From: Macrostomum lignano
Taxonomy: Eukaryota
NCBI GenBank assembly: GCA_002269645.1
Contig: NIVC01003685.1
Coordinates: forward strand, 18,937 to 82,936
Direction of reading: 5' to 3'
Length of the DNA: 64,000 nt
The position numbers and the translations under genes are program-made. Shown here one piece after another: positions 4,476 through 63,531 of this stretch. The notes beneath the pieces are model-generated. The model worked only from the letters and a program-made list of their open reading frames with translations. It was not told where the DNA came from and ran no database searches. Positions within the stretch are counted from its first letter, which is position 1. The number at the start of each line of letters is the position of its first letter.

Positions 4476-7400
4476 TCGCTGTTCTGTGCTAAGAGTCTGA
4501 GACATCTATATTAGGAACGAATCCTCTAGAAATTAATCCGAATAAACTCTAGAGCTATGGGCAACTTAAACAATGGCGGGTATCTAATAATCTATATACC
4601 TAAATATACAACTAAAACAAAGACTAAGAACACAGGGAGTCTGGAACAAAGACTGAGAACACACCGGGGGTCAGGAACAAGGACTAATAACACACGGGAG
4701 TCTGGAACAAAGAATAAGACCACACGGGAGTCTGGAACAAATAATAAGACCACACGGGAGTCAGGAACAAAGACTAAGAGCACAGAGGAGATGGGGACAG
4801 ACTAAGAGCACAGAGGAGATGGGGACAGACTAAGAACACATGGGGGAGTCAGGAACAGACTGAGAACACGGGGAGTTAGGAACAAAGACTGAGAACACAG
4901 GGAGTCTGGAACAAAGGCTACTAAGAACACAGAGAAATCAGGAACAGAGACTAAGACTACAGAGGAGTTTGGAACAAAGACTAGCAAACAGACTAAGAAG
5001 ACACAGGAGTCACGAATAGACTAGCAACACATACATTAAGAAGCATCCTAACCTGATCAGTCGGCAGCTTCTGAGCAGCAGCTGCATCTTCATCACCGGC
5101 GGTGCCGCTACGCATTTTCTCATGATAAGAATCATATCTCTGCCTAGCCTTGGCCCAGTCCTCATTCAGCCTGGCCAGCTGCTTGCACATTTTGCTCAGC
5201 GTAGACTCGGCAGCGTCCCACGAATAGCATCGGCTGAGCTCCTGCTTCGGCAGCAGACCTTCGCCAGAGTCGCCAAGGCAGTCGCCGAACAGCCAGTCGA
5301 ACACGGCCTGACAATCAACCAGCTGCACTTTCACCAGCTTGTCCAGCAGCACAATCAGCATCTGCTCATGCCAGCGCCAGCACTCGTACAGCGAGGCCAA
5401 CACCCGGAGCTTAGCCGCTTGGTTGTCAAGCGGCACCAGAGCTTTGCACACGGAATGGAATTTGGCCAGAGCTGCGAAACTGTGACTGAAACTCTTGCTG
5501 CCCAGGAAGAGCAGGGTGGAGAAGAACACGTCTACCTGCCAGTGCGGGGTTAATGGGTGCGCGGGTAGAATTGCGACTGTTTAACAGGAACCAGCTAGGA
5601 GGCAAGCAGTCTAGGATACAGCCAGATCTACAAGATTTGAGTCTAGAATACAGCCAGATCTACAAGATTTGAGTCTAGGATAGAGCCAGATCTACAAGAT
5701 TTGAGTCTAGGATAGAGCCAGATCTACAAGATTTGAGTCTAGAATACAGCCAGATCTACAAGATTTGAGTCTAGGATAGAGCCAGATCTACAAGATTTGA
5801 GTCTAGGATAGAGCCAGATCTACAAGATTTGAGACTAGGATACAGCCAGATCTACAAGATTTGAGACTAGGATAGAGCCAGATCTACAAGATTTGAGACT
5901 AGGATAGAGCCAGATCTACAAGATTTGAGACTAGGATACAGCCAGATCTACAAGATTTGAGACTAGGATACAGCCAGATCTACAAGATTTGAGACTAGGA
6001 TACAGCCAGATCTACAAGATTTGAGACTAGGATACAGCCAGATCTACAAGATTTGAGACTAAGATACAGCCAGATCTACAATTGATTTGAGACTAGGATA
6101 CAGCCAGATCTACAAGATTTGAGTCTAGGATACAGCCAGATCTACAAGATTTGAGTCTGGGATGATGGAATCGAATCTACAATCCAGTAAAGCAGACAGC
6201 CAGTCAGACAGACGCGAGCTCACCTTGAGCAGCAAGTGTCTCTCGTTCGGGCCGCCATTCTCAGCACCGCCAGCAGGCACGGGCAGGGTGTTGAGCACCT
6301 CGATAGCCCGCTCGGGTGTGCAGCGTTCCCGAATAGCATCGATCAGTCTCTGGGCGGACTGCACCACCTCGGGGCTGAAGTCCTCCTCGATGTCGTATTT
6401 ATAATGACACTCTGGCGGCTTGTCGTGCAGCAGCATCGGGGCCAGGCGCGTACCGAAGCTCTTGCGCACGTGATCGTAGTAGGAGAAGCGGACCAGCAGC
6501 TGGGCGGTGTCGCGCAGGAATACCAGCTTGGGGTGGGAGAATACCAGATCCTGCGGGTAGGGATTGAGTAAGGGGGAATGCTGGGGGATGGCGCTTTGGG
6601 CACCTAACTGATGTCATGACTGGCTAATTCGATGCCATGACTGGCTAATTGGGTGTCATGACTGTCTAATTGAATGTCGTGACTGTCTAATTGAATGTCG
6701 TGACTGTCTAATTGGGTGTCATGACTGTCTAATTGGGTGTCATGACTGTCTAATTGGGTGTCATGACTGTCTAATTGGGTGTCATTACTGTCTACTTGGG
6801 TGCCATGACTATCTAATTGGGTGTCATGACTGTCTAATTGAATGTCGTGACTGTCTAATTGGGTGTCATGACTGTCTAATTGGGTGTCATGACTGTCTAA
6901 TTGGGTGTCATGACTGTCTAATTGGATGCCGTGACTGTCTAATTGGGTGTCATGACTATCTAATTGTATGTCATGACTGTCTAATTGGGTGTCATGACTG
7001 TCTAATTGGGTGTCATGACTGTCTAATTGGGTGTCGTTACTGTCTAATTGGATGCCATGACTATCTAATTGGGTGTCATGACTGTCTAATTGTACGTCAT
7101 GACTATCTAATTGGGTGTCGTGACTGTCTAATTGGATGTCATGACTATCTAATTAGGTGTCATGACTGTCTAATTGGGTGTCATGACTGTCTAATTGGGT
7201 GTCATGACTGTCTAATTGGGTGTCGTTACTGTCTAATTGGATGTCATGACTGTCTAATTGGGTGTCATGACTGTCTAATTGTATGTCATGACTGTCTAAT
7301 TGTATGTCATGACTATCTAATTGGATGTCGTGACTGTCTAATTGGATGTCATGACTGTCTAATTGTATGTCATGACTATCTAATTGGATGTCATGACTGT

Positions 7401-49345: not shown

Positions 49346-49924
49346 TCAATTCTGCCCTCTACTGCAACACCCCGCCCACTTGATTTGGTTTTGCTTCCAA
49401 GCTGAAGCCGCAGAGGGCGCACAACTCCAGCTGTTGCATATAGAGCTCCACGGATGCCATTATAGATGACATTAATTTTTCATTTCCGCCCAAGCCGCCA
49501 TTTAGCTTCATCTACTGAACTTCACCTATACATGTGTTCCCAACAAGCTCACAGGTGGGGCTGGTAGGCAGGTAGGGGAGGCTGAGGCTACCCGCATGCC
49601 GCAACTGAGTAACTGCTAGAGATGAGTTCTCTGCTCCCAGTGAGTGAGTGGCTACCCAGAATGCAGCTGCTTGCCCGCTGTGACACTGAATGGGGGATCT
49701 GTGCTGCAGTGTCCGCTGCACTCACAGCAACCTGAGCTATGAGGTAAGTAATGGACCCGCTAGTGCCAGCACTGCGGGAGGGGACCTGTTGTTGGGACTT
49801 GTTGAGACTAGAGTGGGATGCTGTCCGTCTTCACCTCTTGTTAACCTGCTGCCTGATCCTCCTATAGGAATCCCTCCGCTGGCTTTTTGTCGCATTGTCG
49901 TTCTCTACCTTCGTAATGATGCCT

Positions 49925-51160
49925 CCCGTGCCTTTAAAGTCATCCGCTCTCTACCAAATATTTTCCACTCCCTACTGTGTCATTTCCGCTCTCTACCTAA
50001 TATCTTCCACTCCCTACTGTGTCATTTCCGCTCTCTACCTAATATCTTCCACTCCCTACTGTGTCGTTTCCGCTCTCTACCTAATATCTTCCACTCCCTA
50101 CTGTGTCGTTTTCGCTCTCTACCTAATATCTTCCACTCCCTACTGTGTCATTTCCGCTCTCTACCTAATATCTTCCACTCCCTACTGTGTCGTTTCCGCT
50201 CTCTACCTAATATCTTCCACTCCCTACTGTGTCATTTCCGCTCTCTACCTAATATCTTCCACTCCCTACTGTGTCATTTCCGCTCTCTACCTAATATCTT
50301 CCACTCCTTACTGTGTCATTTCCGCTCTCTACCTAATATCTTCCACTCCCTACTGTGTTGTTTCCGCTCTCTACCTAATATCTTCCACTCCTTACTGTGT
50401 CGTTTCCGCTCTCTACCTAATATCTTCCACTCCCTACTGTGTCGTTTCCGCTCTCTACCTAATATCTTCCGCTCCCTACTGTGTTGTTTCCGCTCTCTAC
50501 GAAATATCTTCCGCTCTCTACCTAATATCTTCCACTCCCTACTGTGTCATTTCCGCTCTCTACCTAATATCTTCCACTCCTTACTGTGTCGTTTCCGCTC
50601 TCTACCTAATATCTTCCACTCCCTACTGTGTCATTTCCGCTCTCTACCTAATATCTTCCACTCCTTACTGTGTCGTTTCCGCTCTCTACCTAATATCTTC
50701 CACTCCATACTGTGTCATTTCCGCTCTCTACCTAATATCTTCCGCTCCCTACTGTGTTGTTTCCGCTCTCTACGAAATATCTTCCGCTCTCTACCTAATA
50801 TCTTCCACTCCCTCCTGTGTCGTTTCCGCTCTCTACCTAATATCTTCCACTCCCTACTGTGTCATTTCCGCTCTCTACCTAATATCTTTCACTCCCTACT
50901 GTGTCGTTTCCGCTCTCTACCTAATATCTTCCGCTCCCTACTGTGTTGTTTCCGCTCTCTACGAAATATCTTCCGCTCTCTACCAAATATCTTCCGCTCC
51001 CTACTGTGTCGTTTCCGCTCTCTACCAAATATCTTGCGCTCTCTTCCGTGACTTTTACGCTCTCTACGAAATATCTTCCGCTCTCTACCAAATATCTTCC
51101 GCTCTCTACCAAATATCTTCCGCTCCCTACTGTGTCATATCCGCTCTCTACCTAATATTT
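49925..51160 (+). repeat. 42-bp minisatellite (ccgctctctacctaatatcttccactccctactgtgtcattt)
   Basis: About 28 copies; shares the ccgctctctacct core with the 21-bp array. Confidence 0.95.
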
Positions 51161-51385
51161 TCCTCCCTTTTACTTAACATTTCCCCTCTCTATCCAACAT
51201 AATCTTTTCCATTAAATTTCAGCCAAACAATCTGATTGCAATTTAACAATCATTTTATCTGCTAAACCTCTGTCGCTTTTTCATCCTCAATGTCACGTGC
51301 ACAACACGGAATCACAACTGAAATATAATCAATGCCAAGTAACAAATTAATGAATAACGCATTTATGATAATTATTAGAACTCAC

Positions 51386-51532
51386 CGGTTTGACTGATAA
51401 GCTGTCGCACCTGTTATCATCGATGTTATTATTATTATTATTATTACTATTATTATTATTGTTGTTCTCAACAAGGCCCGTGCTCAGTCTCAGTTGATTT
51501 GACTCAAATTTAATGCCAACCTGAGCTGACAT
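51386..51532 (-). CDS. Candidate first coding exon of Lhx2/9 (poly-Asn)
   Basis: MSAQVGIKFESNQLRLSTGLVENNNNNNSNNNNNNNIDDNRCDSLSVKP|gtgagt. It ends in phase 0 while the LIM1 exon needs phase 1, so an intervening exon or an indel is required. Confidence 0.45.
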
Positions 51533-51559
51533 GCCTGAGCTGAAAATGCGCTCTGCGGG

Positions 51560-51700
51560 AGGCCGGCTGTGGGATTTGTGCCCCCCCCCCTGGCGATCTA
51601 CTGAAATATTTCAATTGAAACCTAGCCTGCCCCATTGGGGCGGCGCAGGATGAATTTCATTGGCTGAGAGGCCGCACTGGCGTGCTCAGCGATTCGCTCC
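51560..51700 (-). promoter_or_regulatory. Putative Lhx2/9 promoter with two CCAAT boxes
   Basis: attgg on the plus strand near 51634 and 51660, in GC-rich sequence ~100-130 bp upstream of the candidate ATG. Confidence 0.4.
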
Positions 51701-51824
51701 GAAGCTGTGTGTGCAAGCAGAGGGGGCAGTTTCAGAAGACCGAAATTTCAATTTTTTTCACTGGCATAGCATAATAAGAAGTAAGACATGAATGTAAATT
51801 TCACAGGCTCAAAATCTACTTTGA

Positions 51825-52575
51825 ACTAAATTTCATTAGACACATTTTTTTAGAAAAATTTCATTCGACCTAAAGTTCATCAGACCTAAATTTCATTAGA
51901 CCTGAATATCATTAGACCTAATTTTCATTGGACCTAAATTTCATTAGACCAAAATCTCACTAGACACAAGTTTTTTAAAAAATTCATTAAACCTAAATTT
52001 CATTAGACTTAAATTTCATTAGACCTAAATATCATTAGACCTAAATTTCCTTAGACCTAAATTTCATTAGACCTGAATATCATTAGACCCAATTTTCATT
52101 AGACCTAAATTTCATTAGACCAAAATTTCATTAGACCTAAATATCATTAGACCTAAATTTCCTTAGACCTAAATTTCATCAGACCTAAATTTCATTAGAC
52201 CTAAATTTCATCAGACCTAAATTTCATTAGACCTAAATTTCATTAGACCTGAATATCATTAGACCTAATTTTCATTAGACCTAAATTTCATTAGACCAAA
52301 ATTTCATTAGACCTAAATATCATTAGACCTAAATTTCCTTAGACCTAAATTTCATTAGACCTAAATTTCATTTGACCTAAATTTAATTAGACCTAAATTT
52401 CATTAAACCTAAATTTCATTAGACCTGAATATCATTAGACCTAAATTTCATCAGACCTAAATTTCATTAGACCTAAATTTCATCAGACCTAAATTTCATT
52501 AGACCTAAATTTCATCAGACCTAAATTTCATTAGACCTAAATTTCATTAGACTTAAATTTCATTCGACCTAAATA
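51825..52575 (+). repeat. 16-bp minisatellite (agacctaaatttcatt)
   Basis: Direct reading; a short 22-bp array also lies at 53100-53220. Confidence 0.93.
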
Positions 52576-53745
52576 GAACAAAGCTCCGGAATTTTGCTAA
52601 AAGATAACGTTTGATTTCAGGTGATATGAAATTTATAATTCTTGTATCGAATCCTCATTTTGATTTTTGCAAAAACACTGCTTAACTGAGCAGGGCCAAC
52701 CCCTAGGCTCAGAAAGTGCACATGCCCTGACGTCAGGGAAAGTGAGGGCCGCTGGACACCCTGTGTGAGCTGTGTGCATGAGTGCGTACCTGTGTACAGT
52801 ATGGGCGCACTTGTCTGTGCTAATGAGTCATCGGAATATTTTTATCATTATTAAATTAACTATAGTACAAACAACCACCTGTCCTGAAGGCTGTTGAGAC
52901 GAGTATATTAAGCTTGAAAAATGGTCCATGACCTCCCTAAAAATAATGAATAAGACCAACCTGGGTCAGCTGCGAACAGCTGGGTTGTTTAGCAACAATG
53001 GTCAGAAAATATTTCCTTATTTAAAAAAATTCACTTCAAAATTATTGAGACTTTTTATTCTTTATTTTGAAAGTTTTAAAAAACCCACAGTCTACATACA
53101 GACTCTGAACTCAGGGTTTACAGATCCAAACTCAAACTCTTACAGAATCCGAACTCAAAATCTACAGAATCTGAACTCAAATCCTACAGAATCTGAACTC
53201 AAATCCTACAGAATCTGAACTATATATATAATTATTTAAATACTTAACTTGTAACTACTTAAATAGACATGAAAGAAGTTAATTAAACCTGATATATTAT
53301 TTTTTCTTCAGAATCCTCTTCACACTACGCTACTAGTAAGTAGGCTATGGTATTGAAACCGCTATTTTTTAGGTATCAAAAATTCTGGAAATTTACTTGT
53401 ATAACTTTTTCGAAGGATGCACTGCACTGAGGAACAAAAGAAAGCAGCGCTTTTGGCCAGAAGAGAAAAATGAGCACAAGCTTGGGCAGAGAGGTGCAAT
53501 TTTTAAGACCCGCGCGAAGGCTCGGACCCTCCACCAACCCCAGCACTCTGCTCATGAATGTACGCGCGTAGAAGCAACCTGCGCTGGGGGGGGGGCGAGC
53601 AGAGAGGCAGAAAGGTTGCCATGCCAACAGTGCTCAACAGATGATGGCTCGACTCGTTCATTCCTGACCCCCTCACCCCTGCAACTGTATTTTAACACCT
53701 GACTGAGCGGCTTCTCAACTAAGCACTGCTCAGAGCTGGGGCAGC

Positions 53746-56700
53746 ATGAGTTCGACCGGCGACTCACTCGTGGACATCGATGAAGCCATCGAGTTCAGCG
53801 TCCGCGGCTTTATCGGCCAGAAACGGCAGGTGCGACTGCCGCTGACGGCCCTGGCGCAGCACATCGCCCTGCAGGTGCCGGCGCTGGCGCGGGTGCCACC
53901 GGCGCTGCAGGCGCTGCGCTATAACGGTGCCGCGCTGGATCCGAGCCGGACGCTGGACGAGTGCGGCCTGAGGCCCGGAGCCGAGCTGCAGTTGATGCTG
54001 CGAGTCACCGAGTGGCTGGAGATCTTCATCAGGCATCCGCGCGGCGACCGGTGCAGCCTGTTCCTGGAGCCCGGCAACTCCGTGCTCGACATCAAGCAGC
54101 TCATTGAGTTCTACGACGGTATACCGGCGGGCGTGCAGACGCTGCGGCTGCTCGGCCAGGGTCAGCCACCGCTGCCGGACACTCGGACGGTGGCCGACCT
54201 GCAGCTGCGGGACGGAGACGAGCTCACGCAGGAGCTGTCGGTGCCAGACTACCAATGCGGCCTGCCGGAGCTCGACGAGCCGACGCCGGTGACACCGCTG
54301 CCGGTGCCCCGGTTGCCGGTGAAGCCGCACAGGCAGCGGCCGAACCTGCCGGAGCCTCCAAAGCCGCGGGCCAGCGACGCTAAAATTGCCGACGAGGCCG
54401 GATCCGACTTCAGCGACGAGCACGACTTCGGCCTGCCGCTGCTGTTCCCGCACGGCCTGCCAGACAACCGGCCGACGGGCGGCTTCGGCTTCTATATCGG
54501 TGACGAAGAGGACAGCGGAGAAGAGGACGGCGGTGGAGGCGGCGGCGGACCTCCCAGACCGAGACGGAGGAGAGGCTCAGCTAGTGAAGGTGACTCAATC
54601 TACATCTCCGACGATGACGGTGGAGAGGGCGGCGGCGGCGACGGTGAAGGGGGCGGCTTCATGCCTGAAGGCTCTGGAGATGCTGATGACATCATCAATG
54701 GCGGAGGCGGAAGCGGCGGTGGAGGCGAGGGCGAAGGCGAAGGCGAAGGCAAGGGCGAAGGCGACGGTGAAGGAGAAGGAGAACCGCAGCCCCGCGGCTG
54801 GAACGACCAGCCGAGCAGTGACGTGGATGACGACAATGAAGAAAATCTTGAAGGCGGTGGCGGTGGTGGTGGTGGAGTAGCGGGAGACGAAGATGGGGGA
54901 TATGATGACGACGCTGACTTGCCTAGACCGATACCGTTCCGTCCGGGCGGGGTTGACGATGACAGCGGCGGCGGTGGCGGCACAGGTGAGGACAAAGGAG
55001 GTGGCGAAGGAGGAGGCGAAGATGAAGGCGGCCCGGACATGCCGATGCCCAGGGCCGCAGCCTATGACGACAGTGGCGGAGAAGGAGAGGAAGGCGACGA
55101 AGAGCCTCCGGGTCGGGTGACTCCGTTTGTTCCCGCCGACCCGTCTGGAGGCGGCGGCGATGCTGACGGCGGAGGTGGCGGACGCGGCGGAGGCGAGGGA
55201 GGTGTCGAAGGCGATGGAGGCGCTGGTGAGACCGGAGATGCTGGAGGAGCAGCCGACGACCAAACTCCTGAGCCGCGGAGCTCCGGCAATGGAGGCGGTG
55301 GCGGTGACGAGGGCGGAGGGGGCCCTGAAGGTGGCATCGGTAGCACTGGTGGCGGCGGCGGAGGCTCCGGTGGCGGCGAGCAGCCGAACGCTGAAGACGC
55401 TGGATCGGGGGCTCCAGAACCAGGCGCCGCGGCACAAGTGCCAAGCGGTGGAAACGACGGCGGCAGTGGCGGTGGCGGTGTGCCCGGAGGTGCTGCTGGG
55501 GCCGCTGGAGCCGCTGGAGCCGGTGTTCTCGCCGGTGCCGGCGGCGCCACGGCAATCGCGGTTGCAGGAAGCAGCGGCAATCAGCAGCAGGAGCAGCAGC
55601 AGCAGGACGACCGTCGCGACAGAGACAGACGAAGGCGGGATTCTGGCGACTCGAACAGAAGCCGACACAGCCGGCGCAGCAGCCGCAGTCGTCGAAGCAG
55701 CCGTTCTCATCACAGCCATCGAAGTCGCAGCTCGCGCAGTCACAGCTCCAGCAGTGGCAGCTCGCACAGCCACGGCTCTCACGGCGGCGGCGGCGGCGGT
55801 CACGGCGGCAAGAAGCACAAGAAAGGAGGCGTTCTGAAGACCGCTCTTAAATACGGGGCAGCCGCGGCCGTGGGTGCCGGAGCGGTCTACCTTGGCAGCA
55901 AACTGTTTGGTAAAAAGAAGGGCAAAGCGGCCGGCGGAGCGGCCCCGCAGACTCTGAAGACCATCGTGCAGCAGCAGCAACAACAGCCTGGAGGCGGCGG
56001 CGATAGCGATGGCGGTGGTGGCAGCGGAGACGACAGCGGCGGCAAAGGCGGCTCCAAATCCAGCAAGCTGGCAGGCCTGCTGGGCCCCGGAGGCAAGGGT
56101 CTGGCCGGAGCCGTGGCCGGTGCCGCGGGAGGAGTTGCGGCTGGCGTTGGCGGCAAGAAGCTGTGGGACCACGTCAAGGGCAAGCGAGGGCGCAAAGATG
56201 TTGTGACCGCGGAAACGCCCGACGAGCCAGAAAAGGAGACTGTGCATCAACAGGGCGGCAAAGAGTTGCCCGAAGCGGACGAAGACGAACATCATGACTC
56301 ACCAGCTGAAGAATCGGTTGACGAATACGACGTTAAGTCAAACCTGAGGCCGCGAGGAGGAAGAGGGTTGGAAGATGGCTCGGACGAGGAACCCAAGCCG
56401 GGTGGCGGGGGCAAGATGGCGGCCGCGGCGGCGGCTGCAGCTGGAGCTGCAGGCATTGGAGGTGGCATAATTGGAGCGTCTGGAGTGGGTGTGATTGTCC
56501 CGCCGAGCCAACCAAATCAGGAAGCTCGGCCTACGGAGCCACCCACGGAGCGCGACGCGATTCAGGGTGGCAAGGAGCCCCCCGGACCTCCGATTCCATC
56601 TCGAAGAAGACTCACGCCCCAACCGCCAGATGACGAAACGCCGAAGGCGCCGCGCCGGGGTCCCAGCCCGACGCCGCGACTACGGAGGCACCAGGCGCAG

Positions 56701-59700
56701 GCAGATTCACACGCTGACGATGAAAGCGCAGAGCATGACCAGCATGAGGGCGGCAAGGAGGCCCCAGAGCTGCAGATTGACAGCGGTGGAGGAGCTGACG
56801 ATGGTGGGAAAGCTGCACCAACCAAGCGCCCGAGGAGCCGCGTCGCTGCTGGCGACTCTGACGAAGCCAAGCGGGATAAAAAGAGGAAAAAGAAGAAGGA
56901 CGCAGAGGGTGGCCTGCCGATGCCCGTGCCAATATTTGTACCTTCCGAACCGGGCAGACGGGACGATAAACCTCGGAAACCGCCGTCGTACCGAAGCAAA
57001 CTCAGCGACACAGGGGACAGGGAGGAGCCGACAGCGCCGCCTGACTCCGACGCTGAAGCCGCAGCTGACGAAACAAAACAACCAGTCCTTCTGCCCTCCG
57101 ACTTAGGAGACAAGGACGGGCCTCATCCCAAGGGTTTCCAGCCATTAGACGACCAATCCTCAGTGGATGAAAGCCAAGCAAAGGAGGATAAGAAGCCAAA
57201 CGCCAGCAGAAAGGAGGGTAGCAAGTCGAGCAAATCGAGCAAATCGAGCAGCTCGAGTTCAAGTTCAAGTTCAAGTTCAAGCTCGGCGTCGAGTCCCGGC
57301 ACAAAGACAGGCCCCTCAAAAGGCTCTGGTCCTGAGGAAGAGTCCAGTAGCAACCGATGGCGCCAAATGTACGAAGACGCGCTTGGACGGACGCTGCTAC
57401 GCGGTAAAATTCCTGCCCTTTTGTACGGCGGCCGCAAGACGGTGGTACTGCGGAAGAAAAAGCGCTACGTGCACCGACATGCCGGCAAGAGGTTCACTCC
57501 GGCCCCTAAGCTGGGGCCTCGTTACAGTAGGAGAGGGCGAAGCGCAGCTTCCAAGCAGCCAACGCCACAAGCGACGGTGGCTGCCATCGGTTCTGACAAA
57601 TCCGAAGTTCCGCAAGAGAAGCCAAAGCCTGCTAAAAGGTATAAGGACATGGCAACTGACGCAGAACCAATGAAAGAAGACGACTTTATTCTCGGTCAAA
57701 AGAAGGCAGTTGCAAAGCCCGATGTTCCAGCACCCGATGAGCCCCCGGCTCCAGAGCCAAAGAGCTACATCAGCTCTGGCATTCGGCTCGCTCGGATGAT
57801 CAAAGCATCCAGAAGCCGGAAGAATTTTTCTGTGATGTCTGTGGCATGCTGGGTCCGAGGCATTCGCATCCGGCCAGGGCCAGACGACTGTCCGAACAGA
57901 CCCCGTCCACCGTGCCAAAATCGAAAGCGTCGGACGATGAAGCTGCGAAGACGCTTCCGCTACCATCCAAGCAGGACGCATTCGCCACCACTTCGGACTT
58001 GCTGGCGGACTTCAGCCGGCACGGCTCCGTTCGAACTCAACCTTTAGTGAGCGAAGTGGGCACCGAAACGGAGCGCAAAAGTGACGACGAATCCAAGGAG
58101 CAGCCGAGCGTACCAGTGCCCGCTCCGCAGATGGCTGATATTTCAACATCAACTCAGGGCGCAGAGGAGGAGAGCGAGCCGCTTTTTAACATCCCTGATC
58201 AAGCGCGACCCCCAGCAAGCCGGGACAGCCTGGCATCGCTAGTAGAAGAGAAACCCAGCGATGACACGAAGAAGACCTGGAAAAAAGTGGTGGATCCCGA
58301 CGATCTGCTCCCTGGAGGCTGGGACGAGCCATCGGGATCGTCGGATTTATCTAACGGAAAGCCGGACGGAGCCTCGAAGACAGTTGTCGATTCTCACGTT
58401 TGCGTTGATGAGCCTCCAGACAGCGGCCGACGCAGCAGGCAGCGAACTCTGGAATCCAGGTCGTTCCAGACCGAGCCCAGGCCCAGCAGCTCCGACCGCT
58501 GCACACAGACAAAGCCAGAAAAAGCGCCGGAGGAAGATTCCAGCAAAAAGCAGCCTCCGCTTCTAGATGAAAGTCATGGAAAAGATCGCCCAGACGAAGG
58601 ACATGAATTTCGCTCCTCCGATCCTATGAAGTTCCAGAGACCTGCCAACCTTCATGCTGCATCAGAGCCCCACCTGGATGATGGTGCCGAACAGCTGGGA
58701 TTCCCACTTCATCTGAGGTACTATGAGGCATCTGAGGACTCGACTGAGCTTCCCCAGCAACCATCAGAGCATCCTTTATCACGGTGGGACCGGGAAGAAC
58801 TTCTGGCCCTGTTGGAACTCAGCAGAGGTGACGTACAGAAACGCCAGGGATTGACAACTTCCGAGATTGAGGCGGAGCTCGACGCTATTGAGGAGCTCAT
58901 GAACGACGGTGAGAGCGAACTGATGGCGGAGCTGGCCAACTTGAGGCGGCTTCGCAGGGCTGCAACCAAGTCTCCCGAGCTGGCAAATAGCTCGCACTGG
59001 TTGATGGCTGACGCCGAATCGGACCTGCCAACTCCGTCGGATCAGTACTCGGAGCAGGAACTCGCTGTCAATTTCGAGCACAACGAGCTGCTCGACCGTG
59101 ACTTTGCGGCCAGCGGACACAGTCGGGGTCGTGTAGGCAGCGCGCCCCTCTCCAGACGCAGCCGAAGTCTTATCCGGGCCACCGACTCGCCAACCCCCAG
59201 CGAAGCTGCTGTGGAGCGAGTTGAAAAGCTTCTAGCAGCCGGAGTTCGACGAAAGCTGGCCAGCAGAGGACCCCGCGCCAGACCCCCGATTTCTCCTTTG
59301 GCGCCGGCATCTACAGCGTCGGATGATCGGAGTTCAATCATTGAGCCGCTGACGCCGCCTCGAACGCAGCCAGTGGCGCCAGTCAACCGCCGCGTGCCGA
59401 TACAGTTTCTGACAGGTGAGCTCCGACGACCTGGACCGTCGAGTTTCAGTCGAATCCTGCCGCCAGACGCCGGTCAAAACACAGAGTCGCTCCTGCGGCA
59501 GGCTGGTCTGCTCTCCAATCGGCCGGAAGACTTCAACTCGGCATCAAGTACGCCGTCCAGTGTGCGCTCTCTGTCTTCCTGCAGAGCTGAGCGAATCACG
59601 GTAGACAGGCCGCCTGTGCTGCCCAGTTACTCAACCACCCCGCAACAGCAGCCGGTGCCGCCGTCGTTGAAGCAGCGGATCATCACAGACAGCGAGCTGA

Positions 59701-61310
59701 GAGACTGGACTAATCGAGTGTCCGGCCGAGCCCAAGCCGACCAGGAGCCAGTCAAATCAAGTACGATGACAGTTCCACAAGGAACTATTTGGGATCTGGA
59801 ACAGCTGGCTAGACAGGCCAAATCTGAGTTGATCAGCTCCACCGAGAGAGCCAAAGCCATGCTGGAATCGGCGGCTCAAGCAACAAAGATTCGGCAGGAG
59901 TTCAGCGAGCCAAACGGTCATAAGGCGACGCAGACGAAGCGATCCCCAGAAACGAAGTCCAGCATGACCAAAGCTGAGAGTTCGTCAGCTTCAGCAGCTG
60001 CTAAGCAATTGAAAGATGAGCAGCCACCATCAGGGAGTCAGCGCCAGCGAATCCGCGTCACCATCGATGTCGGGCGCCTGCGCGCCAAGCCGCTGTCGGC
60101 AACGCTCGACGCGGACACTCACGTGGAAGACCTGCTGTCAAAGGTGAGCCGAGCCACAGGGCTGGATTCGCAGTGCCTGCGTTTGAAATTCGGCAACAGG
60201 CAGCTCAATAGGGGACGAACTTTGCGGCACTACGAGCTGAGTGACGCCTGTGTGCTCCGACTGTGCGCCGACCAGCTGGTGAAGTGCACCGTGCTACACC
60301 GCAACAGCTTCCTGCCGGTCACGATGCCGCGTAACGCGACGGTGCGGACGCTCCGAATGAAGCTCCACGGTACCGACAGAGCCAGCAAGACTGCCGACTT
60401 TGACCAGCTGCGCATTGCCATGGGTGACCGACTGCTTGATGACGCTCGGGAACTCGTCCGACTCGGCCTGGGCAAAGACGACGTCCTACAAGCGACCGGA
60501 CCAAGCCACTTTGATCTGCGAGTTCGCGTCGGCGACAAAATTTTGGCGCTGTTCGCCGAACCAGACCTGCAGATCGGCACGCTGAAGTCTCTCGTTCACC
60601 GTCTCGGTGGCCCACGGCCCTACGACCAAACCCTGACGCTGCGCGGCCGCGTGTTGTGCGACAGTCGCCGGCTCGCCGACTACTCGGTGACATCAACCAG
60701 CAGCCTGGAGGCGGTCGGGCCGGACCAGCCGGTGGTGCAGATCGCCGTCAGACCCAACTACGAGTTTGTCGTGCCCCTGCGTCCAGGCCTGACAACGAGT
60801 GAGGCTGCTGCGGCGGCGCACCAACTGGCCGCGGATCTCGTCGACAGCAGCGAGGAGCCACCGCTTCGGCTTGCTTGGCTCCCGCCGCCGTCGGCATCAA
60901 CCGATGCGGCCTCGACGCCAGTTGTCGTCCTCGAACCCGACACTCAGCTGGATAGTGTCGAACTCGAACCCGGCGGCGACGGCGGCAACCTTCGCCGGCT
61001 GCATTGCCTGCAGGCGTCGGACTCCACCGACAGCAGCGGCACCGACGGCGGCGCCATTGTGTCCGTGTTCGTCCGCGATCCGAACGGAGCGGCCCGGCTG
61101 TACAGCGGCTGCCCGGCCGACATCGGGCTGGGCGAGTTCCGCGACCGACTTTCGGCCGAGTTGGCGAGCGGCGTCGGCAGCGGCGGTGGAGGTGGTGGAT
61201 TTCAGCTGCGGCCAGTTGGAGCAGCAGCAAGTGCGACGGCTCCGCTGGGAAGCCTGGCCGACAGTCAGGGATTTCTGGTGCTGCAGATGCTGCCGGGTCT
61301 GCCCAGATAA
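53746..61310 (+). CDS. Giant multi-ubiquitin-like-domain protein (~2,520 aa if the single frameshift at ~57741-57800 is corrected)
   Basis: ORF1 53746-58047 and ORF2 frame open 57741-61310. UBL-like units at ~53788-54003, 54016-54240, 60048-60263, 60277-60495, 60508-60714 and, degenerate, 60730-61015 and 61054-61296 (e.g. LRYNGAALDPSRTLDECGLRPGAELQL; LRLKFGNRQLNRGRTLRHYELSDACVLRL; QTLTLRGRVLCDSRRLADYSV). Gly/acidic/Ser-rich linker. No intron evident. Confidence 0.8.
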
Positions 61311-62899
61311 GTGCACGGGAGCTCTACGTGTTGCTGCTTGCCTGAACTAATAGATTCAGTGATAACTGCATGTACCTGTAGATATCGTCACTTCAAAAAT
61401 TTGCTTTTTCGCTACTCTGAGGACCAGTTATATTTTGTAGTGGAAAAGTATATCATTTCCATTGGGGCTTGTGTGTTACTATCTAGGTACTTCTTGTGGT
61501 ATCTACCTGGTACTAAAAATCACAGTGCTAATTAGCATAACCTGTACGCTACGCAGACAATGCGAAAGGATTTCAATGATTGCTTTCTTAGAATTCTGTT
61601 AGGGCATGGCTTCATAAGAAATCAGTAATTTTCAGGGTATACTTCACCGACCAAACTCTCTTCAGGAGAGGCGTGGTGGGCCCAAGTCACAGTGAGTGTA
61701 CATGCCTGATGATAAGGCCCTGCGTGAGCGTGCGGCTTCCATTTTACGAGTTAAGTTTCATGCGCAAATAAGTTTAGCCAGCTATATGCAAATAATACTA
61801 CTATCCTTAAGAGTAGTCTCAGTTACGGACGATATGAAAAGTGGAGGAGTGGCCCAATCGAGTTAAAAAAAACTACTGTTTGTATACAGTACCGTGTTTT
61901 TTAAGAGAAGAACATTCTGTGTAAACGTATTTTTAATTATTCTGTCCTTACGCTTGCCTAGTTAAAATTAACCATGTTTTGTTAATCCGCGTTGAAAAAT
62001 AAAATATACAAAGCCTGTCCTGCTTTTGCTACTCTGCACCACTTTAATTAGTAGTATTGTATACAAAAATGAAACAAAACAATGTCTTTTTTAATTATGT
62101 TTAATTCTGTGAAAAAAATCTGCCCAGTCAACAAGCTGTGATTAATTAGCAAAATTGATTTGATTTATTTATACACTCAAAATTTAACTGAAGCAGACCA
62201 TAGCAATATTAAAGGAAATTAAAATAAGAATAAATTGCTAAATAAGCTGACTGATTGGGTTTAGTAGTACATGTAGTACATATCTGAACAAAAAATAATT
62301 AACAGAAAAAATAGAACAATCACGACTTAAGTTGAACAAGAATTATCATAATTAATAAAACAAAATGCAGTCAAGAAGCCGAACGAAAATTCAGATGGTC
62401 AAATTGGGGATTGAGTCAGGGTCGGGAGTTTCTACGGAAGCAAACAACACTGACAATATATTTGCGTATCCCGTTCGCTCTACTATGAGTAGAAGCAGCT
62501 GAAAATAAGCAAATCTACTCTATTTTTTTGAAAAAAAAGAAAAATAAAACTGCATCAGTCTAACAAAAGTCCAGCGCAAACTGAGGAAGACCCGAAAGTC
62601 AGGCGAGAGATGAAAAAAATCTTTCATAATTTTCTAAAAAATATTGAATGGAAAATAAAATGGCGCAATAAAGCTCACACATGCTACTAGATTTGTGACT
62701 AGAATGCGAACAGGCTGAGGCAGACTTCAAATAACAACAAAAATATCGGCTCAAAATAAAAATACATCTTTTATAAACCAAATCACAGATGCGAGCATCG
62801 AACACAGAAGTACGAATAAAGTTGCTTGATTGTGCAGCGTCTACTGATGATGCGTAAATATATGAGTGAGTGGGAACAGATTGGGCTTTAGATGTGACA

Positions 62900-63460
62900 G
62901 GAGGGATGAGATGAAACATAGGATAGAGATTACATTGAACAGGAGAGAGATGAGACACGACAGAGAGATTATAAGAGACAGGGGAGAGAGTAGATGAGAC
63001 AGAGATGAGAGATTAGATGAGACAGGGAAGAGAGAATAGATGAGACAGGGAAGAGGTTGGATGAGATAGGCAAGAGGTTAGATGAGACAGTGGAGAGATT
63101 AGATGAGACAGTGGAGAGATTAGATGAGACATGAGAGAGATTAGATAGACAGGCAAGAGGTTAGATGAGACAGTAGAGAGTTTAGATGAGACAGGGGAGA
63201 GAGTAGATGAGACAGAGAAGAGAGATTAGATGAGAAAGGGAAGAGAGAATAGATGAGACAGGGAAGAGGTTGGATGAGACAGGCAAGAGGTTAGATGAGA
63301 CAGTGGAGAGATTAGATGAGACAGTAGAGAGTTTGGATGAGACAGGGGAGAGAGTAGATGAGGCAGGCGAGAGACTAGATGAGACAGTGGAGAGATTAGA
63401 TGAGACGAGAGATTAGATGAGACATGAGAGATTAGATGAGACATGAGAGATTAGATGAGA
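62900..63460 (+). repeat. GA-rich degenerate minisatellite (gagagattagatgagaca)
   Basis: Direct reading. Confidence 0.85.
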
Positions 63461-63531
63461 CAAAGGAGAGAGAGTATATAAAAGAGATTAGACGAGTCGG
63501 AGAGTTAGAATAGGACAGGACATGCCAGGTA

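What the first reader, a model, noticed from the sequence alone, without database searches (positions are those of the whole stretch)
53746..61310. Intronless ~2,500-aa protein with about 7 divergent ubiquitin-like domains bracketing a huge disordered linker
Seen: two tandem UBL-like units at the N-terminus, about five at the C-terminus, none followed by a clear di-Gly cleavage motif, separated by ~1,900 aa of Gly/Asp/Glu-, His/Ser- and Lys-rich low-complexity sequence, with recurring GGKE motifs, a CxxC...HxH element (FFCDVCGMLGPRHSH) and helical patches (LSRWDREELLALLELS...). Established: polyubiquitin precursors have near-identical GG-terminated units, and integral-UBL proteins usually carry 1-2 units. 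Inference: I do not recognise this architecture; it could be a lineage-specific multivalent scaffold (proteasome/p97/DUB or condensate related). A 7.6-kb CDS without introns is also odd where neighbouring genes have an intron every few hundred bp, suggesting retroposition or rapid expansion.
Basis: partly seen in the sequence, partly recalled or inferred. Interest (0 to 1): 0.72.

Follow-up and report, generated by a model that had tools for sequence, protein, structure and literature searches.

The report
Flatworm giant protein capped by decayed polyubiquitin
This is a real but unstudied single-exon gene of the flatworm Macrostomum lignano whose roughly 2,500-residue product has worn-down, uncuttable polyubiquitin repeats at both ends of a huge disordered middle; it has no detectable relatives and no known function, so it is a curiosity, not a breakthrough.

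Summary
The window is Macrostomum lignano assembly Mlig_3_7.

The break is one missing G in a GGG run at 57785-86. Two sister contigs carry GGG and read through. Each contig has its own private 1-nt homopolymer contractions elsewhere. I therefore read the break as a long-read assembly error. The corrected ORF is 7,566 nt (2,521 aa) with 0 internal stops against about 74 expected.

Five ubiquitin-like units have sequence support: two N-terminal and three C-terminal. Their junctions keep the exact head-to-tail spacing of polyubiquitin. The GG cleavage sites and the Ile44 patch residue are lost.

The 1,936-aa linker is compositionally disordered and matches no Pfam family. An exhaustive search of 1.84 billion proteins found no ortholog, only polyubiquitin-type matches to units C1-C3.

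GenBank's RNA-seq-based annotation covers only the 3' ORFs, so transcription of the 5' half is unproven. Retroposition and rapid expansion are unsupported. Function is unknown; the best guess is a nuclear, non-conjugatable scaffold.

The parts
53746..61310 (+). Whole coding region. It is 2,521 codons plus a stop once one G is restored at 57785-86. As given in the window it is split into ORF A (53746-58047, frame 1) and ORF B (57846-61310, frame 0).
   Evidence: After correction there are 0 internal stops, against a mean of 74 (minimum 47) in 2,000 local shuffles; the other five frames have 40-113 stops.
57785..57786 (+). Frameshift site. The window has GG where sister contigs L001 and L002 have GGG. 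This is most likely a homopolymer error of the long-read assembly.
   Evidence: Alignment. Window and L002 are otherwise identical over 53465-57866. L002 has its own C5->C4 contraction near window 59194. L001 has seven private 1-nt deletions, six of them in runs of two or more identical bases.
53782..54009 (+). UBL unit N1 (aa 13-88).
   Evidence: PF00240, 31.8 bits, E = 1.3e-7. In register with polyubiquitin.
54010..54240 (+). UBL unit N2 (aa 89-165). It follows N1 directly: the junction LRVTEW|LEIFI has the same length as ubiquitin LRLRGG|MQIFV.
   Evidence: PF00240, 29.2 bits. Ungapped alignment across the junction.
54241..60047 (+). Linker of 1,936 aa (aa 166-2101): Pro-rich, then acidic Gly/Asp/Glu-rich, Arg/Ser/His-rich, Gly/Ala-rich hydrophobic tracts, Lys-rich, poly-Ser, and Ser/Pro/Glu-rich blocks. 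Predicted disordered.
   Evidence: Composition. All linker segments fall on the disordered side of the charge-hydropathy boundary. No Pfam family. No homolog.
54433..55485 (+). Acidic Gly/Asp/Glu-rich block (aa 230-580). Gly runs are encoded by mixed GGC/GGT/GGA codons.
55606..55815 (+). Arg/Ser/His-rich basic block (aa 621-690), resembling an RS domain.
   Evidence: composition only.
56413..56508 (+). The most hydrophobic of the Gly/Ala-rich tracts (aa 890-921). Two others reach the Kyte-Doolittle threshold (aa 583-611 and 785-803); a fourth, seen by eye at aa 695-722, does not. Their meaning is unexplained.
   Evidence: Kyte-Doolittle 19-residue window up to 1.68.
56869..56901 (+). Lys-rich cluster KRDKKRKKKKD (aa 1042-1052), which looks like a classical nuclear localisation signal.
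   Evidence: pattern only; the NLS function is inferred.
57831..57869 (+).
   Evidence: Present. No Pfam match for the surrounding 361 aa.
58767..58979 (+). Helical-looking patch LSRWDREELLALLELS...LRRLRRAATKS (aa 1675-1745).
   Evidence: Sequence. No family or homolog match.
60048..60272 (+). UBL unit C1 (aa 2102-2176).
   Evidence: PF00240, 25.9 bits. Polyubiquitin alignment.
60273..60503 (+). UBL unit C2 (aa 2177-2253), the weakest of the five supported units.
   Evidence: PF00240, 14.9 bits, E = 0.022, below the cut-off. It lies in register between C1 and C3 in the three-unit alignment to polyubiquitin.
60504..60722 (+). UBL unit C3 (aa 2254-2326).
   Evidence: PF00240, 30.2 bits..
60723..61040 (+). 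Putative unit C4 (aa 2327-2432), unverified. Only a motif-level resemblance (VVLEPDTQLDSVELEPGG against ubiquitin-type L-x-D-x-R-T-L-x-x-Y-x-I).
   Evidence: No Pfam hit, no profile hit, hhalign P = 0.25, AF2 pLDDT below 50. MAFFT places the motif in register. Composition is on the folded side.
61041..61307 (+). Putative unit C5 (aa 2433-2521), unverified. The protein ends ...LQMLPGLPR with no GG.
   Evidence: hhalign P = 0.011 for the first strand-strand-helix part only. No Pfam or PDB hit. AF2 gave low confidence.

Best explanation
A single-exon, lineage-restricted protein-coding gene of Macrostomum lignano. The true product is about 2,521 aa.

Shown:
- The split into two ORFs in this window is a 1-nt homopolymer error of the PacBio-based assembly.
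- Both ends of the protein are decayed head-to-tail polyubiquitin arrays: two units at the N-terminus and three at the C-terminus. A further 195-aa region has folded-type composition and may hold two more degenerate units.
- Unit junctions keep the exact 76-78-aa polyubiquitin spacing, but every RGG|M cleavage site is replaced (TEW|L, CAD|Q, TGP|S...). The protein ends in PGLPR.

Inferred:
- The units cannot be released by deubiquitinases or conjugated, so they are built-in domains.
- The ubiquitin Ile44 position is R/R/K/A/T, so they probably do not dock on canonical UIM, UBA or proteasome receptors and serve as lineage-specific protein-protein interaction modules.
- The 1,936-aa middle is an intrinsically disordered, block-charged spacer with an RS/HS-rich block and a KRDKKRKKKK-type cluster. 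This suggests a nuclear location.
- The working model is a nuclear, non-conjugatable scaffold: two multivalent UBL end-caps joined by a long flexible spacer.
- The gene most likely arose from a polyubiquitin gene (intron-free coding region) that lost processing and acquired the spacer.
For: - Organism and copies.
- Frameshift as assembly error: two of three contigs carry GGG. Window and L002 have 0 substitutions over 4.4 kb. Each contig has private single-base contractions at different sites. In L002 the ORF runs 1,829 codons straight through the window's break.
- Real ORF: 0 stops in 2,521 codons against about 74 expected. Amino-acid runs are encoded by mixed codons, including both Ser codon families.
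- UBLs. Junction spacing. No GG and Ile44 replaced.
- Disorder.
- No orthologs.
- Transcription of at least the 3' half: GenBank CDSs on all three contigs in an annotation built only from RNA-seq transcript models (PMC5730564).
- No transposon hallmarks.
Against: - No transcript or annotated protein covers the 5' 1,346 codons in any copy.
- The annotated CDSs (1,154 aa in the window, 514 aa in L002) are not the longest ORFs at their loci. This fits an mRNA 5' end near 57.67-57.85 kb and a shorter major product.
- No orthologs means no test of purifying selection. The only divergent stretch between copies (L001, last 400 nt) has 5 non-synonymous against 4 synonymous changes, which is uninformative.
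- Fold prediction failed for all units.
- Nuclear localisation, scaffold function and polyubiquitin ancestry are inferences from sequence patterns.
Confidence: 0.55

Rival explanations
1. The functional product is the 3' ORF only: about 1,154 aa from Met1368, made of a disordered region plus the C-terminal UBL cluster. It would be made from an internal transcription start or spliced-leader acceptor near 57.67-57.85 kb. The upstream 1,367 codons would be used only in a rare long isoform, or not at all.
For: - GenBank annotates only 3' CDSs: 1,154 aa in the window, 514 aa in L002 and 724 aa in L001.
- The 1,433-aa and 1,829-aa upstream ORFs are not on record, although the pipeline picks ORFs from RNA-seq transcripts with TransDecoder.
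- One 5' end between about 57,670 and 57,846 would explain both choices (my inference from ORF lengths).
Against: - There is no stop codon between the two halves in L002.
- The upstream part is stop-free over 1,367 codons and begins with an ATG followed at once by two bona fide UBLs. That is not expected of untranslated sequence.
- The annotation excluded transcripts overlapping repeat annotations, and the 5' half contains TRF-detectable low complexity. Its absence may therefore be a filtering or assembly artefact.
Confidence: 0.25
2. A transcribed but functionless relic: a duplicated polyubiquitin gene that lost its cleavage sites and recognition surfaces and accumulated low-complexity sequence, kept open by chance or youth.
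For: - No ortholog anywhere.
- The Ile44 position and GG are lost in all units.
- Units are 15-32% identical to each other and to ubiquitin.
- There are 5 non-synonymous against 4 synonymous differences in the only divergent stretch.
- About 75% of the protein is low complexity.
Against: - Units this diverged imply long evolution, yet the frame has 0 stops in 2,521 codons where about 74 are expected. That is hard to obtain without selection.
- Four units still pass the Pfam gathering threshold.
- Homopolymer runs use mixed codons, not pure slippage repeats.
Confidence: 0.15
3. A retroposed copy of an intron-containing parent gene, or a gene carried by a mobile element.
For: - The CDS is intronless in a genome averaging 4.9 introns per gene.
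- There are several near-identical copies.
- The locus is embedded in satellite DNA.
Against: - There is no parent or paralog with similarity outside the UBLs.
- There is no A-tract or target-site duplication after the 3' end.
- There are no LTRs or TIRs, and no reverse transcriptase, integrase or transposase domain.
- The copies share flanks. This fits the known redundancy of the DV1 assembly, 180 Mb in blocks at least 95% identical, not transposition.
Confidence: 0.05

Closest known systems
Polyubiquitin precursors (UBB/UBC type)
   Same: The units are head-to-tail beta-grasp units with no linker and the same junction length. N1-N2 and C1-C3 align ungapped across unit boundaries with linear polyubiquitin. 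The coding region is intron-free.
   Different: Units are only 15-32% identical to ubiquitin and to each other. No unit ends in RGG. The Ile44 position and most Lys positions are changed. The arrays are separated by 1,936 aa of non-ubiquitin sequence. The product therefore cannot yield free ubiquitin.
Integral ubiquitin-like-domain proteins (RAD23, ubiquilin, BAG6, midnolin and similar)
   Same: The UBLs are built in, neither processed nor conjugated, and sit in a larger, largely disordered protein. BAG6-like proteins also combine a UBL with a long Pro-rich disordered region and an NLS (from established knowledge).
   Different: Those proteins carry one UBL, usually N-terminal with an intact hydrophobic patch for proteasome docking, plus partner domains (UBA, BAG, STI1). 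Here there are 5 (possibly 7) UBLs at both ends, no partner domain, and a changed patch residue. There is no sequence similarity outside the UBLs.
Tandem-UBL proteins: ISG15, FAT10, OASL C-terminus, and the five UBLs of USP7
   Same: They also have two to five consecutive divergent UBLs in one chain. The OASL and USP7 units are likewise not conjugated (from established knowledge; an OASL UBL structure, 1wh3, appears among weak PDB hits).
   Different: ISG15 and FAT10 end in GG and are modifiers. USP7 and OASL attach their UBLs to a catalytic or OAS-like domain. None has UBL clusters at both ends of a 1.9-kaa disordered spacer.
Unannotated divergent multi-UBL arrays in other eukaryotic assemblies (for example P0056, 1,911 aa, and P0011, 1,292 aa)
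   Same: These are long chains of divergent ubiquitin-like repeats, mostly without GG, and they are the best non-self hits.
   Different: They are uninterrupted arrays of many units with no giant spacer. Similarity to this protein is limited to the generic UBL fold over C1-C3 (about 22-26% identity). Their sources are unnamed, or labelled 'UBC' or 'ubiquitin C'.

Membership tests
Ubiquitin family domain (Pfam PF00240, beta-grasp UBL) | Score at or above the Pfam gathering threshold (25.4 bits) for each unit scanned alone | tested here: met
   N1 31.8, N2 29.2, C1 25.9 and C3 30.2 bits. C2 scores 14.9 bits, below the cut-off. C4 and C5 give no hit.
Ubiquitin family domain (Pfam PF00240, beta-grasp UBL) | Beta-grasp three-dimensional fold | tested here: inconclusive
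   AlphaFold2 without homologs gave pLDDT 37.4, and 36.9 with a 3-row alignment. Only the strand-strand-helix-strand order is suggestive.
Polyubiquitin precursor | Head-to-tail units of about 76 aa without linkers | tested here: met
   Ungapped alignment across the N1|N2 junction; the C1-C3 alignment is collinear and the C1|C2 junction keeps the same length.
Polyubiquitin precursor | Near-identical units, each ending in Arg-Gly-Gly for cleavage by deubiquitinases | tested here: not met
   Unit identities are 15-32%. Positions 74-76 read TEW, SVP, QLV, SHF and DQP. The C-terminus is PGLPR.
Ubiquitin-like modifiers (ISG15/FAT10 type) | C-terminal Gly-Gly exposed for conjugation | tested here: not met
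   There is no GG at any unit end or at the protein C-terminus.
Proteasome-shuttle UBL proteins (RAD23/ubiquilin type) | Conserved Leu8-Ile44-Val70 hydrophobic patch on the UBL | tested here: not met
   The Ile44 position is R, R, K, A, T. The Leu8 position is F, P, L, -, -. This is alignment-based, not structural.
Proteasome-shuttle UBL proteins (RAD23/ubiquilin type) | Partner ubiquitin-binding domain (UBA, UIM or STI1) | tested here: not met
   No Pfam family other than ubiquitin-type families at E <= 1 over the whole protein.
USP7-type UBL arrays | USP catalytic domain in the same chain | tested here: not met
   No peptidase family found.
SR / RS-domain splicing proteins | RRM plus an RS domain | tested here: not met
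   An Arg/Ser/His-rich block is present (aa 621-690), but there is no RRM.
Processed retrogene | Intron-containing parent gene, a poly(A) remnant and target-site duplications | tested here: not met
   No parent was found. No A-tract follows the 3' end. There are no flanking direct repeats.

The most novel reading that the evidence does not exclude
In the Macrostomum lineage a polyubiquitin gene was converted into a giant, non-cleavable protein. Its two ends are multivalent arrays of re-purposed ubiquitin folds and its middle is a newly evolved 1.9-kaa disordered spacer. That would be a de novo built 'sticker-spacer-sticker' hub, for example organising a nuclear condensate or acting as a decoy for ubiquitin-chain readers, with a second, N-terminally truncated isoform made from an internal mRNA 5' end.
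Probability: 0.15. Interest if true: 0.6.

Novelty: new variant of a known kind. Interest (0 to 1): 0.35.

Why it matters
If the full-length protein is made, it would show how a housekeeping polyubiquitin gene can be recycled into a lineage-specific structural protein. Its cleavage sites and recognition surface have eroded while the fold and the unit spacing persist. It would also add an extreme case to the small set of multi-UBL proteins.

In practice it flags a mis-annotated locus. Three near-identical copies in Mlig_3_7 are each truncated by a different homopolymer error, so the GenBank proteins (1,154, 724 and 514 aa) are fragments of one 2,521-aa ORF.

M. lignano has RNAi and transgenesis, so the function is testable. 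With no orthologs, no expression data and no phenotype, the present significance is modest.

Tried and rejected
- **Word-indexed homolog searches** with ORF B, the C-terminal cluster and the N-terminal 1,346 aa found only the gene's own cluster or nothing. This left no alignment depth for structure prediction.
- **AlphaFold2** on the C-terminal 426 aa alone, and on C4-C5 with a 3-row alignment of the protein's own di-UBL segments, gave pLDDT of about 37 both times. I ran no fold search because the models are too poor.
- **Custom broad UBL profile** built from 154 divergent units taken from the exhaustive-search hits, with hmmsearch --max and hhalign: it recovers only the five known units. C4 gives P = 0.25 and C5 P = 0.011.
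- **PDB phmmer** of C4-C5 found nothing.
- **dN/dS between copies** was uninformative. Window and L002 are identical. L001 differs only in the last 400 nt of the CDS, with 5 non-synonymous and 4 synonymous changes.
- **A short intron as the cause of the frame change** was rejected. The only GT...AG candidate of the right length class that I found by hand inspection of the sequence is about 23 nt, and the sister contigs show a plain 1-nt difference.
- **Transposon or virus origin** was rejected. There are no LTRs or TIRs and no mobile-element domains.
- **Recent internal duplication** was rejected. BLASTP self-comparison gives no off-diagonal hit at E < 0.01.
- **Expression data** were not found. 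'Mlig032073' is absent from the full-text library and from the held supplements of four M. lignano papers; a fifth paper had no supplements held.
- **The antisense 566-aa ORF** (54595-56295) was dismissed as a by-product of GC-rich low complexity. The reverse frames carry 40-54 stops over the locus.


Full report
**1. What is in the sequence**

The interval 53746-61310 on the + strand is not one open reading frame in the window as given. ORF A runs 53746-58047 in frame 1 (1,433 aa). ORF B is open from about 57737, has its first ATG at 57846 and stops at 61310, in frame 0 (1,154 aa).

**2. Source organism and sister copies**

ORF B is 100% identical to a GenBank protein cluster of Macrostomum lignano. 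The cluster includes PAA45869.1, locus tag BOX15_Mlig032073g5, 'ubiquitin-like domain-containing protein'. The window is the last 64 kb of contig NIVC01003685.1 of assembly GCA_002269645.1, Mlig_3_7. Two further contigs carry the same locus:
- L002 is part of NIVC01000136.1.
- L001 is NIVC01005265.1, which begins at window position 57751.

**3. The frameshift is an assembly error**

At 57785-86 the window has GG where both sister contigs have GGG. Over 53465-57866 the window and L002 show no substitutions. They differ only in homopolymer lengths: this G, and a G-run upstream of the gene.

In L002 the ORF runs 1,829 codons from the same ATG straight through the window's break. It is then broken by L002's own private contraction, a C5 run read as C4 near window position 59194, where the window and L001 agree on C5. 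L001 has seven private 1-nt deletions in the CDS, six of them in runs of two or more identical bases.

Each contig is thus broken at different homopolymers while the other two agree. That is the signature of uncorrected long-read consensus errors, not of a pseudogene or an intron. Restoring the one G gives a 7,566-nt ORF of 2,521 aa.

**4. It is a real reading frame**

The corrected frame has 0 internal stops. Shuffling bases within 300-nt blocks gives a mean of 74 stops and a minimum of 47. The other five frames carry 40-113 stops.

The low-complexity runs are encoded by mixed synonymous codons:
- Gly runs mix GGC, GGT and GGA.
- The Ala8 run uses four codons.
- The Ser14 run mixes the AGY and TCN families.

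The simplicity is therefore at the protein level and is not a pure DNA microsatellite.

**5. The ubiquitin-like units**

Scanned one at a time against Pfam PF00240 (cut-off 25.4 bits), the units score as follows:

| Unit | Score |
|---|---|
| N1 | 31.8 bits |
| N2 | 29.2 bits |
| C1 | 25.9 bits |
| C2 | 14.9 bits (E = 0.022) |
| C3 | 30.2 bits |
| C4 | no hit at E <= 10 |
| C5 | no hit at E <= 10 |

Against PDB sequences, C1-C2-C3 align collinearly with three consecutive ubiquitin units (E = 6e-31). N1-N2 align ungapped across a unit junction with linear polyubiquitin (E = 2e-66 for a nine-unit chain).

The junctions keep the polyubiquitin length. LRVTEW|LEIFI and LRLCAD|QLVKC stand where ubiquitin has LRLRGG|MQIFV. 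No unit ends in GG, and the protein ends in PGLPR. The position of ubiquitin Ile44 is R, R, K, A, T in the five units. Units are 15-32% identical to ubiquitin and to each other.

C4 and C5 remain unverified:
- A broad UBL profile built from 154 divergent units recovered only the five supported units.
- hhalign gave P = 0.25 for C4 and P = 0.011 for C5.
- PDB phmmer found nothing.
- Both AlphaFold2 runs were unusable, at pLDDT 37.4 and 36.9.

Three weaker observations speak in their favour. There is a motif-level match in register. The low-confidence models show a strand-strand-helix-strand order. The composition lies on the folded side of the charge-hydropathy boundary. The count is therefore five supported units plus a 195-aa C-terminal region that may hold two more.

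**6. The linker**

Residues 166-2101 (1,936 aa) contain, in order:
- a Pro-rich stretch;
- an acidic Gly/Asp/Glu block (about aa 230-580);
- an Arg/Ser/His block (aa 621-690);
- four Gly/Ala-rich hydrophobic tracts, three of which reach the Kyte-Doolittle threshold;
- Lys-rich clusters, including KRDKKRKKKKD;
- a Ser run;
- a long Ser/Pro/Glu-rich part with one helical-looking patch.

All linker segments fall on the disordered side of the charge-hydropathy boundary. No Pfam family matches, including across the repaired junction and the CxxC...HxH element. GGKE occurs three times, in similar contexts; 0 of 20,000 local shuffles reach that count. BLASTP finds no internal repeats.

**7. Relatives**

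An exhaustive HMMER scan of 1.84 billion representative proteins with ORF B found the gene's own cluster and, otherwise, only polyubiquitin-type proteins. Those match residues about 739-957 (C1-C3) at about 26% identity. Nothing matches the 730 non-UBL residues or C4-C5. The N-terminal 1,346 aa have no hit at all in the word-indexed search.

Some hits are long, divergent, GG-less UBL arrays from unnamed eukaryotic assemblies. They have no spacer and no specific similarity to this protein. The architecture has no detectable ortholog. Note that other Macrostomum species are probably not in these databases.

**8. Transcription**

The GenBank annotation of Mlig_3_7 was built solely from RNA-seq transcript models: StringTie and TACO, the TBONE boundary pipeline, then TransDecoder. 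Transcripts overlapping repeat annotations were removed (PMC5730564). CDSs are annotated on all three contigs but only in the 3' part: 1,154, 724 and 514 aa. The upstream ORFs of 1,433 and 1,829 aa are not on record.

The 3' half is therefore transcribed, and the 5' half is unproven. The two annotated CDSs that are not the longest ORF at their locus would both be explained by an mRNA 5' end between about 57,670 and 57,846. This is my inference. It could mean an internal start or spliced-leader acceptor that gives a 1,154-aa isoform, or simply fragmented and filtered transcript models over the GC-rich low-complexity part. No paper or held supplement mentions Mlig032073.

**9. Surroundings**

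The 13 kb upstream of the gene (40-53 kb) and the region 62.9-63.5 kb downstream are satellite arrays. There are no LTRs or TIRs around the gene and no A-tract after its 3' end. The nearest recognisable genes are a homeodomain exon (36875-37615, - strand) and a cap-binding-protein-like MIF4G_like_2 exon (4993-5529, - strand). The latter domain is only partly contained in its ORF, so it is split by introns. The near-identical copies share their flanks. This fits the known redundancy of the DV1 assembly, not transposition.

**10. Interpretation**

Shown:
- a single uninterrupted 2,521-codon ORF, once an assembly error is allowed for;
- five UBLs arranged as decayed head-to-tail polyubiquitin arrays at both ends;
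- no cleavage or conjugation motif;
- a 1.9-kaa disordered spacer;
- no orthologs.

Inferred:
- descent from a polyubiquitin gene, which would also explain the intron-free coding region without invoking retroposition;
- non-processable UBLs that have lost the canonical Ile44 recognition patch and so probably bind lineage-specific partners, not the proteasome or UBA/UIM readers;
- nuclear location, from the RS-like and Lys-rich blocks.

The working model is a nuclear scaffold with two multivalent UBL end-caps. The rivals are a 3'-only product (0.25), a functionless relic (0.15), and a retrogene or mobile-element origin (0.05).

**11. Verdict**

This is a new variant of a known kind, an integral multi-UBL protein derived from polyubiquitin. 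It is also an annotation and assembly correction for M. lignano. Interest is moderate to low until transcript structure, conservation and a phenotype are known.

Noticed in passing
window 40282-53221 and 62904-63492: The gene is embedded in satellite DNA. The arrays are: a 25-nt array (41217-42172); (TATC)n of about 400 copies (42778-44387); 20-nt GGGGAGGATAGGAGCGGATG arrays (44855-45873 and 46460-48614), which cause the extreme GC skew; a 42-nt array (49943-51163); a 16-nt array (51826-52574); and a 21-nt array (62948-63471). The long 'ORFs' there (588, 596 and 453 aa) are repeat artefacts.
   Followed up: partly
L001 versus window 57751-63000: L001 has no substitutions against the window up to 60904 (only 1-nt deletions). 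It then becomes about 1.5-2% divergent, with 9 substitutions in the last 400 nt of the CDS and 25 in 1.7 kb downstream. This is a sharp mosaic boundary: a recombination or gene-conversion tract between copies, or a chimeric contig.
   Followed up: partly
window ~53585 (G-run upstream of the ATG); L002 3820-3830: A G-run of about 10 G lies 160 nt upstream of the start codon and differs in length between the window and L002. This is another likely homopolymer error, in the putative 5' UTR or promoter.
   Followed up: no
window 36875-37615 (-) and 4993-5529 (-): Exons of neighbouring genes. One is a homeodomain (PF00046, E = 1e-18). The other is a nuclear cap-binding-protein-like MIF4G_like_2 segment (PF09090, E = 3e-32) covering profile positions 58-188 of 263, so it is split by introns.
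   Followed up: partly
window 54595-56295 (-): A 566-aa antisense ORF and several 160-240-aa ORFs in other frames overlap the Gly/Asp/Glu-rich part. They are by-products of GC-rich low complexity, not genes.
   Followed up: yes
window 55492-55578, 55828-55911, 56068-56154, 56413-56508: Four Gly/Ala-rich hydrophobic tracts, two of them followed by Lys-rich residues, sit inside an otherwise highly charged disordered region. Three reach the Kyte-Doolittle threshold; the tract at 55828-55911 was picked by eye only. The last reaches Kyte-Doolittle 1.68 over 19 residues. Whether they are membrane-active, self-associating or just low complexity is unexplained.
   Followed up: no
window 57670-57846: The GenBank CDS choices in the window (1,154 aa) and in L002 (514 aa) would both follow from an mRNA 5' end in this 180-nt interval. 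A pyrimidine-rich stretch ending in AG (about 57684-57705) lies inside it. This could be an internal spliced-leader acceptor or transcription start. It could not be tested without reads.
   Followed up: no
proteins P0009, P0011, P0045, P0056 (hits): Long chains (1,090-1,911 aa) of many divergent, mostly GG-less ubiquitin-like repeats exist in unnamed ENA eukaryotic assemblies. One of them (P0045) is fused to a P-loop NTPase-like region. They are essentially unannotated.
   Followed up: partly
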